DNA of 64,000 bases, from IMG/VR virus record IMGVR_UViG_3300042923_000569, positions 124,001 to 188,000 of that record; one strand, written 5' to 3'. Shown in pieces: positions 23,719 to 30,384 of this stretch (the first letter of the stretch is position 1; each line of letters begins with the position of its first letter). Below the pieces are notes generated by a model. That model saw only the letters and a program-made list of their open reading frames with translations. It was not told the origin of the DNA and did not search any database. The position numbers were made by a program, and so were the translations under genes.

Positions 23719-24159
23719 TTATTGTAGTACTTTAAGTTTATATAATATGCTCTCAACAAAACTCATTATATCTTCGAGTGTGTTTACAGAGCCAAATTCA
23801 TCAAGACTTTCCAATATTTCATGTATCTTGGTACAATGTTTTACGTACTCTTCCAACAAAGGAATTGCTGCCTCAATTGGTTGAAATACATACGAACTAC
23901 CAGTACTAAAAATTGGACCACGTTCTGCCATCATTCCTTCAATAAAGGAATCAACATATTCTGGAAGCTCTTTATATAATTCATCCAGTTCCATATGTTT
24001 TGAATAGTTTCTGCATTGTAAATGCCAGTGGTGTGCTTGTGATTCAAGAAAAATACTATTCTCAACGAATTTAATTAATACATCTTCGTGAGTGTCGTCT
24101 GATATTTCTACATAATCAATCATACTTCGTATGTCATTAGGATCAAAAGGTTCGCTCAT
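23719..24159 (-). CDS. ferritin/Dps-like four-helix protein
   Basis: QAHHWHLQ...YSKHMELDELY...VDSFIE...ILYKLKVL pattern. Confidence 0.65.
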   Translation of the reverse strand: MSEPFDPNDIRSMIDYVEISDDTHEDVLIKFVENSIFLESQAHHWHLQCRNYSKHMELDELYKELPEYVDSFIEGMMAERGPIFSTGSSYVFQPIEAAIPLLEEYVKHCTKIHEILESLDEFGSVNTLEDIMSFVESILYKLKVLQ

Positions 24160-25511: not shown

Positions 25512-26006
25512 TTATAGAAAAATACGTTTAAGTTTGTCATCAGTTCTATTAAAAAATGTTTCTACAAAGTTTAAATCTTCAAAGATGCTTGGTTCTAATT
25601 CCCGGTCGAAAAACACCTTCTTGGAGTAACGTTCATCTCCATTTCGGTAAGCTACTTTGATTGGCAAAGTAATCTGTTCGTTTTCATTTTGAGTGTAAGA
25701 ACAACTAAGTTTAATATGTTTACCTGTATCAAAAAGAATAATTTCTTGTGCTAACTTTTCAATACCAGTTAAATGTGAAAAAGAATCTGATTCTTTAATC
25801 ATGGTAATTGTCACGATTACATCTTTAGTGTTACCTAAATCATTAATATTCTTAGTTGCACTGATAACTTCCAGATTACCAAAATCAATATCTTTAAGCA
25901 TTAAAAACTCCAAAAACAAAAAAAGGAAATCTCTCGATTTCCTATATTCTACTCTTTGTGCCTGAAAAGTCAAGCTATTTTTTAGGTACAGACTTAATTT
26001 GCTCAA
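25512..26006 (-). CDS. hypothetical protein
   Basis: 164-aa ORF. Confidence 0.55.
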   Translation of the reverse strand: MSKLSLYLKNSLTFQAQRVEYRKSRDFLFLFLEFLMLKDIDFGNLEVISATKNINDLGNTKDVIVTITMIKESDSFSHLTGIEKLAQEIILFDTGKHIKLSCSYTQNENEQITLPIKVAYRNGDERYSKKVFFDRELEPSIFEDLNFVETFFNRTDDKLKRIFL

Positions 26007-26289
26007 GACCAGTGATGGTTTCTACAAGCTTGTTGTGCATTCCTGCACACTTATTGTAAAACGTCTGCCAATCTCTTAGTACTGTGTATAGTTCTTTACC
26101 ATCATACACTTTTTCACCATTTTCATTCAACGTGAAATTGACAGGAATTGGTGTATCAGTACTGCAAAGTTGTAGTAAAGTAGTCTGTTCGATAATAGGT
26201 TTGTTATTAACGGGAACAGTACTACATCCTGTGATCGCGAACGAAACCGCAAGAATCGTTGCAATGAAAAACATTTTAATCTTTTTCAT
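25975..26289 (-). CDS. outer-membrane spanin (Rz1-like lipoprotein)
   Basis: Signal peptide with lipobox AITGC; follows an i-spanin-like gene. Confidence 0.75.
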   Translation of the reverse strand: MKKIKMFFIATILAVSFAITGCSTVPVNNKPIIEQTTLLQLCSTDTPIPVNFTLNENGEKVYDGKELYTVLRDWQTFYNKCAGMHNKLVETITGLEQIKSVPKK

Positions 26290-26291
26290 GA

Positions 26292-26657
26292 TTACTTTTT
26301 CTTCCCATTGATGATTAAAGCAGATTCTTGTTTGTATCGAGTTAATTCATCAACCCCATCCTGATCCATACATTTCTGTAGGTAGATTGGTTTTTCTAGG
26401 ATTGTTTTTTCTCGGATAATGGTATTAGTGGCTGCACCGGCTAATAGGGCTTTCTGGTCTTCAAAACCTTGTGCCTGTTTGCGTTGATAGTCACTGATAC
26501 CATCGTTCACAATCTTTTCTACTTTTTGATTTAAACTATCTTGATACCCATTGTAGTAGGTATGGACTTGCCATCCAGCAAAAACTGTCAGTACTGTGTA
26601 CAAAAAGAACGCAACAATTCCTATTGGAAGTTTGTATAACTTAATAAAATTTAACAT
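26292..26657 (-). CDS. inner-membrane spanin (Rz-like)
   Basis: N-terminal TM helix, coiled coil, EKPIYLQKC; paired with lipoprotein; TAAATA late motif upstream. Confidence 0.72.
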   Translation of the reverse strand: MLNFIKLYKLPIGIVAFFLYTVLTVFAGWQVHTYYNGYQDSLNQKVEKIVNDGISDYQRKQAQGFEDQKALLAGAATNTIIREKTILEKPIYLQKCMDQDGVDELTRYKQESALIINGKKK

Positions 26658-26727
26658 GGTAGCACCTCTCGAAATGCTTGGGTATATACCATATTTAATA
26701 CAACTATTAAGTTTTTCAGCTTATATT

Positions 26728-27192
26728 TTAGCCTTTTTTAGTAACTAAATCTATCAGACATTGTATTGTTGTACAACTTTCAGCAGCATCATCCGAAATT
26801 TCAATCTCGAATTCTTCTTCAAGTGCCATTACAGTTTCAACCATATCAAGTGAGTCAAAACCAAAATCATCATAAACAACCTTTAAAAGAATATTATTTT
26901 TAATAACTTCAGAAACATACTCAGTTGAAAGACCAGATTGCCATGACACAATAGTAATAATACGATTCAATGCATCTTTAGCAACCACTTCTGAAATATT
27001 ATCAGTGACCGTATTAGTAACTGTATCAGTACTTTTATCGAATAAATCAATATTATTGATAGTTGATTGACGTAGTTCTTTTACAAGTTCTTCGACTTCA
27101 TTAAGTATCTGAAAGCGTTCAATTGTATTATTAGATTTGTTATATACACGTGAAAGTGCATTACGAACTAGATATAGATCTGGATTTGACAT
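26728..27192 (-). CDS. protein with C-terminal acyl carrier protein (ACP) domain
   Basis: [43 protein letters not shown] closely matches bacterial AcpP; DSL serine intact. Confidence 0.85.
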
Positions 27193-27739
27193 TTGCAATT
27201 CTCTCTTTAAATCCAGCAGTAACACGTATTAGTAAACGCTGGCAGTTGGTTTCAACTAGTGGACAATTGTGTAGTACTTTACTGGTATATTTGTGTGCAA
27301 CACCAGGAGCACCAACTTTCTCTACTAGTACTTCATTAGTAAGAATATCTTGAATTAAAGTATAGTCTTTAATGTTTATTGGGTTAGTAATGAAACTCGT
27401 ACCTTGGACAGTACCAAAAATGATATGTGTCTCAGGTTCAAAATCGTCATGAATATCATTACAACAGTCAAGATGATAACCGTAAATCTGAGAACCACTA
27501 TCACCAGCCGATAATTCTCTCACGCGGTAATCAACTACAATTGAACGGTCATCGTACTTTTTAATTTCTTCTATCATCCGATTTAGTAATTCTGCCATAT
27601 CGGACGGTATGCTGTCAAGTACTTTTTGAGGTGCTGCGTATTTAAATTCCTGTATTGGAAGGTTCGCTGGAACCTCCCAACTAAACAGATTCATCTCAAT
27701 ACTACCCACTGGATTTAGTGTGTTAGTATCCACTTTCAT
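27161..27739 (-). CDS. putative 2OG-Fe(II) dioxygenase-fold protein
   Basis: GYHLD (HxD)...VLHNCP (distal H)...RLLIR. Confidence 0.45.
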
Positions 27740-28196
27740 ACGGGTTTACAGTTACCTTAATTTCATCAGCTAATTCAATAACAATTTGGAAGTTAGTTTC
27801 AAAAACTGTTTCCAGACAATCTTCAAAATCAGCAGTTCTAAGAATTTGATGGATTTCCTGTCCTTCGCTCTCTGTCAAGTTTGTATTAACTGTTAAGAAA
27901 TCGTCAGGAACTTGTTCTTCATCCCAATACATACGATCCACATATTCATACATGTCATCACAACGAGACTCAGGAAAGTTTGTAATATATACATTTGAAG
28001 AGTGCAAGCACTCTTCGCCATCATTCCATTCTGGAGTACTGCCAATTACGAAAATAGCATCAAGATTTGGGAATTTATTTTTAAGTTCTTTCATATCCAA
28101 TTTTAATTGAGAGATGAAAATATTTTGTATTTCCTTTTTCATTTTCTCAATTTCATTAAGATAATCTTTTACTGCATTCTTTGTATTAGTAAACAT
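27723..28196 (-). CDS. hypothetical protein, tandem paralog family A (copy 3)
   Basis: GSTPEWNDGEECLH...YESGY. Confidence 0.75.
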   Translation of the reverse strand: MFTNTKNAVKDYLNEIEKMKKEIQNIFISQLKLDMKELKNKFPNLDAIFVIGSTPEWNDGEECLHSSNVYITNFPESRCDDMYEYVDRMYWDEEQVPDDFLTVNTNLTESEGQEIHQILRTADFEDCLETVFETNFQIVIELADEIKVTVNPYESGY

Positions 28197-28197
28197 A

Positions 28198-28710
28198 TTA
28201 GTGTCCACAATCGTAATATTCATGATCAATTTTAGGTTCATCACCAGTTAAATCGATATAAACGATATAATCAGTGTGATAAATTTCTTCAATTAGGTAA
28301 TCAATTTGACTAACTAGGTAATCAACTTTTTCATTATCTTCAACTGAATAGGTATTGATTATATCGAAACCATCCCAATCACGTAGTTCTTCATCTTCTT
28401 CAATTTCACCATCAGTAAGAAAATATGCAATACCAATTCCGTATTCAGATAGCTCACTGAAATCATTCCATTTACTACGTTGTGTACATGAGTAATATGG
28501 TTCACTTGAATGAGTACATGCATCTCCATTATTGAAGCTTGGAGTATAACCTTTGATGATTAGTTTATTAAATCCTTCAACTGTTTTAAGTTCATCTACA
28601 GCAGTCTTAAGTAAATCTTTCTTATGAAGGTGAATGAAATTTCCGAGTTCACTCTCTGCTTTATAAGCAGTATCTTTTAGTACTTTGTATTGTTCGAATA
28701 GTGTAGTCAT
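28198..28710 (-). CDS. hypothetical protein, tandem paralog family A (copy 2)
   Basis: GYTPSFNNGDACTH...YDCGH. Confidence 0.75.
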   Translation of the reverse strand: MTTLFEQYKVLKDTAYKAESELGNFIHLHKKDLLKTAVDELKTVEGFNKLIIKGYTPSFNNGDACTHSSEPYYSCTQRSKWNDFSELSEYGIGIAYFLTDGEIEEDEELRDWDGFDIINTYSVEDNEKVDYLVSQIDYLIEEIYHTDYIVYIDLTGDEPKIDHEYYDCGH

Positions 28711-28711
28711 A

Positions 28712-29140
28712 TTAGTATCCACAGTCGTAATAGCCAGTTTTAAATGTAATTGTTCCATCAACGATAACGAAAGCGAATTGGTAATTTGTACCTTCTTTTT
28801 CTTCTAAAATAACATCAACAAGACCTAGCTCAGTTTCGATAGCACGTGCTTCTTCACTAGTAAGATTATTAGTTTCGAAATCACTTTCTTCAATATCTAA
28901 GCTATCAAGTACTTGACCTAATGCTTCTTCATTCATATCTAGTACTTCGATATTGGTCCAGTGCTCACAAGGTTCTCCATCATTAAAAGATGGTGTATAT
29001 CCTACGATAGTACCACAAGTTAGACCTGGATAACGGATACCAAGGTCTTTAATAATTTCCTTGATAATAGCATCAGAATGCTGATTGACCATACCAAGAT
29101 ATACTTCACGTGCCGTTTTAAATTGTTCTAGAATATTCAT
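28712..29140 (-). CDS. hypothetical protein, tandem paralog family A (copy 1)
   Basis: GYTPSFNDGEPCEH...YDCGY. Confidence 0.75.
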   Translation of the reverse strand: MNILEQFKTAREVYLGMVNQHSDAIIKEIIKDLGIRYPGLTCGTIVGYTPSFNDGEPCEHWTNIEVLDMNEEALGQVLDSLDIEESDFETNNLTSEEARAIETELGLVDVILEEKEGTNYQFAFVIVDGTITFKTGYYDCGY

Positions 29141-29142
29141 AA

Positions 29143-30384
29143 TTATTTCCCATACCATTGCATTTCACGAAGTTCAATTAGTAGCTTAGCTGCTTTATGA
29201 ATATCTGGTGCACGTGGTAAATCAGTTTGTTTATATAGTACTTCTCGGATATAGATATCTTTTTCTGTCCAGTAAGCCATCATCTCATCAAATGACCATG
29301 AACCATTTCTGATCGCTAATAGTTCAGCAGCATCAGGACGTTTAACATGAACTTCACCGGTAGTTAATGCTTCTTCGGCAGTTCGTAGTAAACGTACAAC
29401 ATGCATTGCATGTTTTGTATCATAACCGTTGAGTTGCTCTAATTCAGAACGAGCCTCATTACGGTTTTCTTTCCAGCTATGATAGTTATGACGGTTATCA
29501 GAACTCTTCTCGTATTCTTCTTTGTTGAATTTTACAATAAGTTTTGGCTGTTCTTTCACTTCTTCTAATGTCATAACAGAGGTGTCAATACGATTGATAC
29601 TACCATCATAATTGATAGTTTTAGCACCTTCTTTTGGAACTAGACCAAAGATGTTATCACCATATGGAACAAGCTGATAATCATCCCTGTAATTAAGAAT
29701 GTTGAAATCACGATCTAGTACTTGATGTTCGAAATAGTTATGTACCAATTTAACAAAATGATATTGTTTAAGTGGTAAAGTACTGATCATTTGTAATGAA
29801 GCATTACGCATGAATTTTTCGAAATCAATAATAGTTTTTATGTACTGACCTTTCGCCGCTTCAACATTAACAAGATTCATAATGTATGAAGGGAATGAAT
29901 CACCAATCCATTGAACCATTTGCTCACATGGATATTGGTCAATTAGTTCCTGAAGAATACGAACTCCAGTACGTTCTTTATCCATCCAGCCGTGATGATT
30001 TTTCATACGTTTAGCTTGGTTATGAGCATAACCAGTGTATGTAAATGCAATTTTTGAGGATAGAAGGTCGGAACGTGCTGCACGAAGATGATCATACATT
30101 TCAGTTTTGAAAGTAATATCACCTTCATCAACCCATAGTGATTCAAGAATATTTGGGTTAGCAGTAAGATAGAGTTGCATGTAGTTATTCAACTCATAGT
30201 ACTTTGTATCTTCTTCTTTGACGTCACTTACTTCATTAACTTTGAAGAAAGGAGTAATGATGAATTCTTTATCAGCAACAAAGATTCCGCGAAAGTCGGT
30301 ATCAGATGTTGGAGTACTAGTTCCGTAAGCCTGGCTACCTGCCAAGTGTCGGACAATTAAATTGTCTAAATGATTATTTTTCAA
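29143..30384 (-). CDS. pol-beta superfamily nucleotidyltransferase (RNA-repair-associated RlaP-like family)
   Basis: GSQAYGTSTPTSDTDFRG, NPNILESLW, YDTKHAMHVVRLL. Confidence 0.85.
   Translation of the reverse strand: MKNNHLDNLIVRHLAGSQAYGTSTPTSDTDFRGIFVADKEFIITPFFKVNEVSDVKEEDTKYYELNNYMQLYLTANPNILESLWVDEGDITFKTEMYDHLRAARSDLLSSKIAFTYTGYAHNQAKRMKNHHGWMDKERTGVRILQELIDQYPCEQMVQWIGDSFPSYIMNLVNVEAAKGQYIKTIIDFEKFMRNASLQMISTLPLKQYHFVKLVHNYFEHQVLDRDFNILNYRDDYQLVPYGDNIFGLVPKEGAKTINYDGSINRIDTSVMTLEEVKEQPKLIVKFNKEEYEKSSDNRHNYHSWKENRNEARSELEQLNGYDTKHAMHVVRLLRTAEEALTTGEVHVKRPDAAELLAIRNGSWSFDEMMAYWTEKDIYIREVLYKQTDLPRAPDIHKAAKLLIELREMQWYGK

What the first reader, a model, noticed from the sequence alone, without database searches (positions are those of the whole stretch)
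26728..27192. Phage-encoded acyl carrier protein domain next to the spanin genes
Seen in sequence: the C-terminal ~80 aa match AcpP helix II closely ([22 protein letters not shown]), with the phosphopantetheine Ser intact, behind a ~70-aa helical extension. No fatty-acid synthesis genes are nearby. Established: host AcpP also partners SpoT and MukBEF and donates acyl chains. Inference: a decoy or mimic that alters the stringent response or ACP-dependent host functions, or an acyl carrier for phage protein lipidation.
Basis: partly seen in the sequence, partly recalled or inferred. Interest (0 to 1): 0.6.

Follow-up and report, generated by a model that had tools for sequence, protein, structure and literature searches.

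The report
Orphan acyl carrier protein in jumbo phage
This jumbo phage gene encodes a real acyl-carrier-protein domain behind a phage-specific helical extension, but related phages already carry the same annotation, its position next to the lysis (spanin) genes looks positional only, and its function is still untested.

Summary
Window 26728-27192 (minus strand) encodes a 154-aa protein. Its C-terminal ~90 residues are a complete ACP fold, matching E. coli AcpP with RMSD 1.7 Å and 43% identity. The DSLD serine (S114) is intact, and a two-helix N-terminal hairpin precedes the domain.

The genome is a complete 358-kb Rak2-like jumbo phage. Orthologs in Mimasvirus and Eneladusvirus phages are already annotated "acyl carrier protein". 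A 2020 paper already noted the position next to the spanins and detected the protein by LC-MS/MS.

New details from this work:
- The hairpin is conserved across the clade, and GAP32's annotation cuts it off.
- The phage lacks a phosphopantetheinyl transferase and every ACP-using enzyme family tested, so the ACP is an orphan.
- It is the fastest-evolving gene of its block: 31-35% identity against 72-86% for most neighbours.
- The RaK2/K64-1 ortholog has lost the serine (DTWD).
- The gene overlaps by 32 nt an upstream protein with a 2OG-Fe(II)-oxygenase-like fold.
- In relatives, a terminator and a promoter-like motif separate it from the spanins.

Best reading, at moderate confidence: an adaptor or mimic primed by the host enzyme, working through its AcpP-like helix II. 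It is not a lipid donor for the spanin. It is a new member of a known kind, of modest interest.

The parts
26728..27192 (-). The 154-aa hairpin-ACP gene (P0001), stop codon included. It is the ortholog of CBB_163, XbC2_157, fHe-Yen9-04 g153 and GAP32_159.
27007..27192 (-). N-terminal extension, residues 1-62. It comprises a two-helix hairpin (helices 4-19 and 23-52) and a disordered linker. Y17 and R26 are invariant in the 14 N-terminal regions aligned (12 clusters plus two metagenomic orthologs), and R41 is nearly so. No relative was found outside this phage clade.
26731..27006 (-). ACP domain, residues 63-154: a four-helix bundle with extra short helices in loop I. The DSLD motif is at residues 113-116.
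26851..26853 (-). Codon of S114, the predicted phosphopantetheine attachment serine. It is invariant in all 14 aligned cluster representatives (12 share the hairpin), but is Thr in RaK2/K64-1.
27161..27739 (-). Upstream 192-aa protein (phrog_21561) whose end overlaps the ACP start by 32 nt. It has a 2OG-Fe(II)-oxygenase-like double-stranded beta-helix fold, with invariant H89-x-D91, H157, R168 and R172.
26658..26727 (-). 70-nt spacer between the ACP and the i-spanin. It contains a promoter-like motif at 26682-26698, conserved in CBB, XbC2 and Yen9-04 and in looser form (shared core TAAATA) in Munch, RaK2 and a 366-kb metagenomic contig. CBB, XbC2, Yen9-04, Munch and the metagenomic contig also have a GC hairpin plus T-run terminator here; in the window that hairpin is degraded.
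26292..26657 (-). i-spanin (Rz-like, phrog_1152). It is a neighbour only and not part of the ACP unit.
25975..26289 (-). o-spanin candidate, 104 aa, with a signal peptide and lipobox (…ITGC). It is a neighbour only.
27723..29158 (-). Three tandem phrog_10375 paralogs (ORFs 27723-28244, 28198-28761, 28712-29158), upstream in the same gene string.
29143..30384 (-). RlaP-family nucleotidyltransferase (RNA repair pathway DNA polymerase beta family), further upstream in the same gene string.

Best explanation
The gene encodes the Rak2-like jumbo-phage 'hairpin-ACP'. A clade-specific two-helix hairpin is joined by a floppy linker to a complete type-II-FAS-like acyl carrier protein domain.

Shown here:
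- The ACP fold, the intact DSLD serine and an AcpP-like recognition helix II/III.
- Conservation across Mimasvirus, Eneladusvirus, Munch-like phages and metagenomic relatives.
- No phage phosphopantetheinyl transferase and none of the ACP-dependent enzyme families tested.
- The position as last gene of a string of overlapping genes, separated from the spanin cassette.

Inferred: S114 is primed by the host AcpS. The protein then acts mainly through protein-protein contacts of its AcpP-like helix II surface. It would work as a host-dependent adaptor or mimic that engages proteins normally served by host AcpP, and/or a phage partner bound by the hairpin. It is not part of a phage lipid-synthesis pathway and not an acyl donor for the neighbouring lipoprotein spanin.
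For: - Identity and fold.
- Helix II-IV is about 63% identical to E. coli-type AcpP, with all helix-II acidic positions kept (alignment).
- Within the family, helix II-III (mean pairwise identity 0.55) and the hairpin (0.38) are conserved, while helix I plus its loop (0.22) and the linker (0.07) are not.
- DSLD is invariant in all 14 aligned 50%-identity cluster representatives, 12 of which share the hairpin, and in more distant Munch-like and metagenomic orthologs.
- Orphan status: the complete genome has no PF01648, PF00501, PF00109, PF01553 or PF00106, and only one PP-binding domain.
- It is the fastest-evolving gene of the syntenic block: 31-35% identity against 72-86% for the nucleotidyltransferase, the oxygenase-like and the Dps-like genes, and 57-74% for the spanins.
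- The RaK2/K64-1 ortholog keeps the hairpin and an ACP-like domain but has DTWD and no Pfam ACP match (hhalign probability 92%). This argues that thioester chemistry is not indispensable to the family.
- The gene is intact and about 99% identical in contigs from four independent metagenome studies.
- An ortholog was detected by LC-MS/MS in three Erwinia phages (PMC7760394).
- Terminator plus promoter-like motif before the spanins in relatives.
Against: - No direct evidence of phosphopantetheinylation, acylation or any binding partner exists.
- The invariance of the serine in most lineages fits a true carrier role as well as it fits mimicry.
- Rapid divergence could reflect relaxed constraint rather than interaction with the host.
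- The tight overlap with a highly conserved oxygenase-like gene suggests a phage-internal partner rather than a host target.
- The complex prediction gave no verdict.
- No RNA data exist for this genome.
- Only a handful of ACP-client enzyme families were searched in the genome.
Confidence: 0.4

Rival explanations
1. It is a dedicated carrier for the co-translated upstream enzyme. The holo-ACP carries an acyl or aminoacyl substrate that the 192-aa 2OG-Fe(II)-oxygenase-like protein hydroxylates or otherwise oxidises, as in carrier-tethered oxidations such as SyrB2 or the CurA halogenase, yielding a modified lipid or small molecule.
For: - A 32-nt overlap between the two genes is conserved in every relative examined.
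- The neighbour has an oxygenase fold: pLDDT 92, all top Foldseek and VIA hits are 2OG oxygenases including SyrB2, the CurA halogenase and phytanoyl-CoA hydroxylase, and the best Z is 9.4.
- It has an invariant HxD…H…R motif.
- The DSLD serine is conserved in most lineages.
Against: - No loading enzyme (adenylating enzyme or acyltransferase) was found in the genome.
- Oxygenase homologs in Acinetobacter phages pair with a phrog_10375-like gene but have no ACP anywhere in the genome.
- RaK2/K64-1 keep the oxygenase (55% identity) while their ACP ortholog has lost the serine.
- The oxygenase is conserved at 72-79% identity while the ACP is at 31-35%, which is unlike a co-evolving enzyme-carrier pair.
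- Synteny is fixed across the clade, so linkage alone is weak evidence.
- The complex prediction gave no verdict.
Confidence: 0.2
2. It is a non-catalytic structural or assembly subunit. The ACP fold serves as a scaffold, as mitochondrial ACP does in complex I and in the NFS1-ISD11 complex. The hairpin anchors it in a phage complex, possibly the virion.
For: - The ortholog was detected by LC-MS/MS in purified particles of three Eneladusvirus phages: 15.6 kDa, counts of 3-5 and 8-15 in the two sets of columns, which are not labelled in the excerpt read.
- The RaK2 ortholog lacks the serine but keeps the architecture.
- The hairpin is conserved.
- The PDB hits show AcpP itself as a subunit of MukBEF and NFS1-ISD11 complexes.
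Against: - The low counts fit carry-over of an abundant soluble protein.
- The CBB record labels the neighbouring genes 'structural protein' but not its ACP.
- The gene lies among early/middle-type nucleic-acid metabolism genes rather than structural genes.
- The very fast divergence is unusual for a virion component.
Confidence: 0.15
3. It is an auxiliary metabolic gene: an extra AcpP copy that boosts or sustains host fatty-acid or lipid A synthesis during infection.
For: The best family matches are FAS-type AcpP models and E. coli AcpP structures. Phage ACPs are commonly annotated this way.
Against: - It fails every NCBIfam AcpP cutoff (60.6 bits against 106; 49.9 against 70.45), with only helices II-IV matching.
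- A 62-residue extension and an insertion in loop I alter the acyl pocket side.
- It diverges at 31-35% identity between sister genera.
- RaK2 has lost the serine.
Confidence: 0.1
4. It is an acyl donor for lipidation of the adjacent o-spanin or another phage protein.
For: It is adjacent to a lipobox o-spanin in all relatives. The idea was already raised in PMC7760394.
Against: - By established knowledge, bacterial lipoprotein acylation by Lgt and Lnt uses phospholipids, not acyl-ACP.
- No acyltransferase was found in the genome.
- A terminator and a separate promoter-like motif lie between the ACP and the spanins in relatives.
- Spanins of other phages work without any phage ACP.
Confidence: 0.03

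Closest known systems
Annotated 'acyl carrier protein' of Rak2-like jumbo phages (CBB_163, XbC2_157, fHe-Yen9-04 g153, Serratia BF, Erwinia pEa_SNUABM phages, GAP32_159; phrog_18343)
   Same: It has the same architecture of hairpin plus ACP and the same DSLD motif. The gene order is also the same: RlaP nucleotidyltransferase, phrog_10375 paralogs, oxygenase-like gene, ACP, then the spanins.
   Different: It shares only 31-37% identity with them, and it comes from a separate, uncultivated lineage found in soil, plant, insect-gut and food metagenomes. GAP32's annotation starts at an internal Met and omits the hairpin.
Bacterial AcpP (E. coli, PDB 1ACP, 1L0H, 2FAE etc.)
   Same: It shares the four-helix fold, with RMSD 1.7 Å and 43% identity over 77 residues. 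The DSL serine and the acidic recognition helix II are also shared.
   Different: It has an N-terminal extension of 62 residues, a 7-residue insertion in loop I and a divergent helix I. It scores below all AcpP equivalog cutoffs. No FAS genes accompany it.
Other orphan phage ACPs (Ralstonia phiRSL1 ORF083, Achromobacter Motura, Brevundimonas Bajun, Ackermannviridae such as ViI, phiMAM1 and 3M, Vibrio ICP1, Caulobacter phiCbK, Delftia PhiW-14)
   Same: They are stand-alone ACP domains in large phage genomes, set among hypothetical genes with no pathway context and no known function.
   Different: Those checked are about 80-110 aa and lack the hairpin. They are not syntenic with this locus.
Mitochondrial ACP (NDUFAB1/ACPM) as a subunit of complex I and NFS1-ISD11, and E. 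coli AcpP bound to MukB and ISC
   Same: These set a precedent for an ACP acting as a protein-binding subunit rather than a metabolic carrier. They appear among the sequence and fold hits (PMC13343975).
   Different: Those interactions use LYR-motif or coiled-coil partners and the acyl-phosphopantetheine arm. No LYR-like partner or equivalent was identified here.

Membership tests
Acyl carrier protein / PP-binding superfamily (PF00550) | Match to the family profile above the curated cutoff | tested here: met
   35.6 bits against a cutoff of 20.8, E 1.2e-8. The match covers only profile positions 24-66 of 67, that is helices II-IV.
Acyl carrier protein / PP-binding superfamily (PF00550) | Four-helix ACP bundle | tested here: met
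   AF2 model with pLDDT 78.7. Foldseek against E. coli AcpP gives target TM 0.80 and RMSD 1.7 Å over 77 residues.
Acyl carrier protein / PP-binding superfamily (PF00550) | Conserved Ser of the DSL motif at the N-terminus of helix II | tested here: met
   S114 lies in DSLD, which is invariant in all 14 aligned cluster representatives, 12 of which share the hairpin. It is lost (DTWD) in the RaK2/K64-1 orthologs.
Acyl carrier protein / PP-binding superfamily (PF00550) | 4'-phosphopantetheinylation of that Ser | not testable with these tools
   This needs mass spectrometry. No PPTase (PF01648) is in the phage genome, so the host AcpS would be required.
Housekeeping FAS AcpP (NCBIfam NF002149, TIGR00517 equivalogs) | Score above the equivalog cutoff over the full length | tested here: not met
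   60.6 bits against 106, and 49.9 against 70.45. Only residues 105-153 align.
Housekeeping FAS AcpP (NCBIfam NF002149, TIGR00517 equivalogs) | Genomic association with fab/pls genes or ACP-dependent enzymes | tested here: not met
   The complete genome has no ketosynthase, AMP-binding, PlsC-type acyltransferase or SDR family. Hexapep gives only a sub-threshold hit in a 1466-aa ORF.
Rak2-like phage hairpin-ACP (phrog_18343) | Full-length profile match, conserved N-terminal hairpin and conserved synteny | tested here: met
   phrog_18343 matches at E 1.6e-22 over residues 9-153. The hairpin is aligned across 14 sequences. Synteny is shown.
2OG-Fe(II) oxygenase superfamily (for the overlapping upstream gene) | Double-stranded beta-helix fold | tested here: met
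   pLDDT 92. The top 50 VIA hits and the top Foldseek hits are almost all 2OG oxygenases, with Z 9.4-7.1 and E ~3e-4.
2OG-Fe(II) oxygenase superfamily (for the overlapping upstream gene) | HxD/E…H iron triad and a basic residue that binds 2OG | tested here: inconclusive
   H89-x-D91, H157, R168 and R172 are invariant in 30 homologs. Their spatial placement could not be checked, and there is no Pfam or PDB sequence-level hit.
Wadjet JetB / MukE-like | Profile match reproducible across family members | tested here: not met
   E 0.0022 for P0001 only. One of 14 members matches, so the hit is chance.

The most novel reading that the evidence does not exclude
The hairpin-ACP is a viral mimic of host AcpP. 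It is primed by host AcpS in most lineages, or acts as an apo-like form in RaK2. It uses its AcpP-like helix II to occupy or redirect host AcpP clients such as AcpS, PlsB, LpxA/D, SpoT, MukB or IscS, while the hairpin supplies a phage-specific effector or tethering function. If true, this would be the first characterised phage decoy of the acyl carrier protein hub. From my own knowledge (Keating, Carey & Cronan 1995), overproduced apo-ACP is growth-inhibitory in E. coli, which makes this mechanism plausible.
Probability: 0.25. Interest if true: 0.65.

Novelty: new member of a known kind. Interest (0 to 1): 0.3.

Why it matters
Stand-alone ACP genes recur in many large phages, and none has an assigned function. 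AcpP is a hub protein in bacteria, serving fatty-acid and lipid A synthesis, SpoT, MukBEF and Fe-S assembly, so a phage protein that copies its recognition surface could be a compact way to reprogram the host.

This clade offers cultured relatives (CBB, GAP32, BF, fHe-Yen9-04) and a natural serine-less variant (RaK2). That makes the question of carrier versus mimic directly testable. For this window itself, the result is mainly a correct but already known annotation. It comes with a refined gene model that includes the hairpin, and with a newly recognised oxygenase-like neighbour.

Tried and rejected
- Complex prediction of the 192-aa oxygenase-like protein with the ACP scored 0.00, giving no verdict. 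It is evidence neither for nor against binding.
- A PADLOC JetB/MukE-like hit (E 0.002) to residues 17-84 looked attractive because AcpP binds MukB. Only 1 of 14 family members reproduces it, so it was rejected as chance.
- The word-based homolog search found only a 99%-identical copy. The IMG/VR pattern scan found three partial ACP loci without the hairpin. The exhaustive representative search was therefore needed.
- The N-terminal hairpin alone had no usable ESM Atlas hit and no PDB profile hit better than E 0.06. Its weak Pfam hits (E of about 0.07-0.09) all lie below the cutoffs.
- A PDB profile search with the oxygenase-like family found nothing at sequence level.
- No RNA run holds the region, so expression in this genome could not be tested.
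- Contexts of other phage ACPs (phiRSL1, Bajun, 3M, ICP1) showed no shared partner enzyme.
- Literature searches found no experimental study of any phage ACP. The CBB genome paper does not discuss the gene.
- The simple terminator scan found no terminator after the ACP gene in the window itself.

Full report
**Observation.** Window 26728-27192 holds a minus-strand ORF. Its ATG is at 27192 and its stop at 26728-26730, giving 154 aa (P0001). A longer GTG-started version exists, but orthologs align from the ATG.
- Pfam PP-binding matches above its cutoff: E 1.2e-8, 35.6 bits against 20.8, over residues 107-149.
- PHROGs gives a full-length match to phrog_18343 (E 1.6e-22) and to the 'acyl carrier protein' phrog_5934.
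- NCBIfam AcpP models match only helices II-IV and stay below their equivalog cutoffs.
- PDB AcpP chains match at about 1e-10. Over helices II-IV the protein is roughly 63% identical to E. coli-type AcpP, with the acidic helix-II residues retained.

**Fold.** An AlphaFold2 model was built on 76 homologs and has mean pLDDT 78.7.
- Helices 4-19 and 23-52 form the hairpin.
- Residues 53-62 are disordered.
- Residues 63-153 form the ACP bundle, with extra short helices in loop I.
- Foldseek's best PDB hits are E. coli AcpP chains, with target TM about 0.80, RMSD 1.7 Å over 77 residues and 43% identity.

**Genome and relatives.** The window is part of a 357,873-bp virus record with direct terminal repeats. 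It is rated complete and has 35.8% GC.
- tblastn places the protein at 31-36% identity, over nearly its full length, in Mimasvirus (CBB, GAP32, XbC2), Eneladusvirus (Serratia BF, Yersinia fHe-Yen9-03/04, the Erwinia pEa_SNUABM phages) and Erwinia phage Kaldavass. Several of these records annotate it 'acyl carrier protein'.
- Gene order is the same everywhere: RlaP-family nucleotidyltransferase, two or three phrog_10375 paralogs, a ~190-aa protein whose end overlaps the ACP start, the ACP, a short spacer, i-spanin, o-spanin.
- The Eneladusvirus paper PMC7760394 already states that the ACP lies next to the spanin-like lipoprotein gene. It reports the 15.6-kDa ACP in LC-MS/MS of purified particles of three phages.

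So neither the annotation nor the adjacency is new.

**What the family looks like.** The exhaustive representative search returned 2,860 ACP-like proteins at E ≤ 0.001. Among the 150 best listed, only about a dozen 50%-identity clusters share the N-terminal extension.
- In that alignment DSLD is invariant. The hairpin carries conserved positions (Y17, R26, R41, and a TIERY-like turn).
- Mean pairwise identity by segment:

| Segment | Identity |
|---|---|
| Helix II-III | 0.55 |
| Hairpin | 0.38 |
| Helix IV | 0.31 |
| Helix I plus loop | 0.22 |
| Linker | 0.07 |

- More distant orthologs also keep both the hairpin and DSLD. These include Salmonella phage Munch and 366-kb metagenomic contigs, whose oxygenase-like neighbour is only about 52% identical.
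- GAP32's annotated 84-aa ACP is a truncated gene model, because the open frame upstream encodes the conserved hairpin.
- Klebsiella phages RaK2 and K64-1 have a 135-aa ortholog at the same place, with hhalign probability 92% over 127 columns. It reads DTWD instead of DSLD, and RaK2 has no PF00550 match anywhere.
- Erwinia phage Hallingskeid has a different 204-aa acidic helical protein there.
- Against CBB, XbC2 and fHe-Yen9-04, the ACP is the most diverged gene of the block. It shares 31-35% identity, against 72-86% for the nucleotidyltransferase, the oxygenase-like and the Dps-like genes, and 57-74% for the spanins.
- Among near-identical strains in four independent metagenome studies the gene is intact. 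The one difference listed in it, 27037 A>C, is present in all four and changes D52 to E.

**Orphan status.** The complete genome has a single PP-binding domain. The following families gave no match:
- 4'-phosphopantetheinyl transferase (PF01648)
- AMP-binding adenylating enzyme
- Ketosynthase
- PlsC-type acyltransferase
- Short-chain dehydrogenase

Hexapep gave only a sub-threshold hit inside a 1466-aa ORF. If the protein is modified, the host AcpS must do it. That step is an inference, based on the retained helix-II recognition surface.

**The upstream neighbour.** The 192-aa protein at 27161-27739 overlaps the ACP start by 32 nt. It has no Pfam hit but is highly conserved.
- Its model (pLDDT 92) is a double-stranded beta-helix.
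- All leading Foldseek hits (E ~3e-4) are Fe(II)/2-oxoglutarate oxygenases, and so are nearly all of the top 50 VIA-align hits (Z 9.4-7.1). They include prolyl hydroxylases, AlkB homologs, SyrB2, the CurA halogenase and phytanoyl-CoA hydroxylase.
- H89-x-D91, H157, R168 and R172 are invariant in 30 homologs, as expected for the iron triad and the 2OG-binding arginine. The spatial arrangement could not be verified.
- K64-1's RefSeq record calls its ortholog 'oxidoreductase'.

This raises the idea of an oxygenase-carrier pair, but several facts weaken it:
- Homologs in ~94-kb Acinetobacter phages (BS46 and others, about 27% identity) sit beside a phrog_10375-like gene, and BS46 has no ACP at all.
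- RaK2 keeps the oxygenase while its ACP ortholog lacks the serine.
- The two genes evolve at very different rates.
- The complex prediction returned no verdict and is not used as evidence.

**Relation to the spanins.** In CBB, XbC2, fHe-Yen9-04, Munch and a metagenomic relative, the ACP stop is followed by a GC-rich hairpin plus T-run. In CBB, XbC2 and fHe-Yen9-04 a conserved TTAAATATGGTATATAC-like motif then lies about 40 nt before the i-spanin start. Munch, the metagenomic contig and RaK2 carry a looser version sharing the core TAAATA, and Munch's record annotates a terminator there. In the window the hairpin is degraded (one search finds no terminator), but the motif is intact at 26682-26698. 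A relaxed form of the motif occurs six times on the coding strand of the genome, each time 36-49 nt before an ORF start. I read it as a promoter-like element; that is an inference. By established knowledge, lipoprotein acylation by Lgt and Lnt uses phospholipid donors. The adjacency to the o-spanin is therefore best read as positional.

**Mechanism.** I commit, at moderate confidence (0.4), to a host-dependent ACP-like adaptor or mimic.
- The two conserved modules are the hairpin and the AcpP-like recognition helix.
- The phage supplies no enzyme to load or use a thioester.
- The gene evolves fast.
- One lineage dispenses with the serine while keeping the protein.

The main rival (0.2) is a dedicated carrier for the overlapping oxygenase-like enzyme. 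Lesser rivals are a structural or virion subunit (0.15), a supplementary AcpP (0.1) and a spanin acyl donor (0.03). None of these was tested directly. The decisive experiments are mass spectrometry for modification, pull-downs and knock-outs in cultured relatives.

**Comparison and novelty.** This is a new, uncultivated member of an already annotated family of Rak2-like phage ACPs, whose spanin neighbourhood is already published. Stand-alone ACPs are also widespread in other large phages. I found no experimental characterisation of any of them in the literature library. The additions here are these:
- The conserved hairpin and the corrected gene model.
- The orphan status established genome-wide for the families tested.
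- The serine-less RaK2 ortholog.
- The exceptional divergence rate.
- The oxygenase-like fold of the overlapping neighbour.
- The transcriptional separation from the spanins.

Interest is modest (0.3). It would rise if the mimic reading were shown.

**Limits.**
- No expression data exist for this genome.
- Only selected enzyme families were searched.
- The fold assignment of the neighbour rests on a predicted model.

Noticed in passing
window 27161-27739 (-): The 192-aa 'hypothetical protein' (phrog_21561) overlapping the ACP start has a confident 2OG-Fe(II)-oxygenase-like fold and an invariant HxD…H…R motif. It is unannotated in most relatives and called 'oxidoreductase' only in K64-1 RefSeq and BS46.
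   Followed up: yes
window 27723-29158 (-); L020 2430-3468: Three tandem phrog_10375 paralogs carry a conserved TPxFNDGExCxH motif and a C-terminal YYDCG[YH]. A homolog sits directly upstream of the oxygenase-like gene in Acinetobacter phage BS46, so phrog_10375 plus oxygenase looks like the older conserved pair. Its function is unknown.
   Followed up: partly
window 27627-28300: In contigs from other metagenomes that are about 99% identical over 25900-27627, the segment from the 5' end of the oxygenase-like gene (27627-27783, too diverged to align) through phrog_10375 paralog c is far more diverged, about 18% (91-93 differences in 518 nt, plus paired 1-nt indels). This is a local hypervariable or mosaic patch.
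   Followed up: partly
L018 3061-3468 (RaK2_00009); L024 1261-1668 (K64-1 gp009): The Alcyoneusvirus ortholog of the hairpin-ACP has DTWD in place of DSLD, so the phosphopantetheine serine is lost. It is annotated 'hypothetical protein'.
   Followed up: yes
L025 1212-1664 (GAP32_159): GAP32's ACP is annotated from an internal Met (84 aa). The open frame upstream encodes the conserved N-terminal hairpin, so the gene model appears truncated.
   Followed up: yes
L021 2056-2670 (Erwinia phage Hallingskeid): At the syntenic position, between the oxygenase-like gene and the spanin, there is a 204-aa acidic helical protein without DSLD. It has a C-terminal stretch reminiscent of the hairpin motif, so it may be a rearranged or replaced version.
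   Followed up: no
L014 1718-3237 (Ralstonia phage phiRSL1): The phiRSL1 ACP (ORF083) lies immediately downstream of an RtcB RNA ligase (Pfam E 1.6e-125). In the window the ACP's gene string includes an RlaP 'RNA repair pathway' nucleotidyltransferase, and relatives have Thg1 further upstream. This may be a recurring RNA-repair neighbourhood or a coincidence.
   Followed up: no
window 26682-26698, 24195 and 8675 regions (-); genome-wide: A CTAAATA(T/A)NRTA-like motif occurs six times on the coding strand of the genome, always 36-49 nt upstream of an ORF start. The ORFs include the i-spanin and the Dps-like gene. It is a candidate phage promoter.
   Followed up: partly
window 23719-24159 (-): A 146-aa protein is 85% identical to CBB_169 ('structural protein') and XbC2_163 ('starvation-inducible DNA binding protein'). 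This Dps-like protein is labelled 'structural protein' in the CBB record.
   Followed up: no
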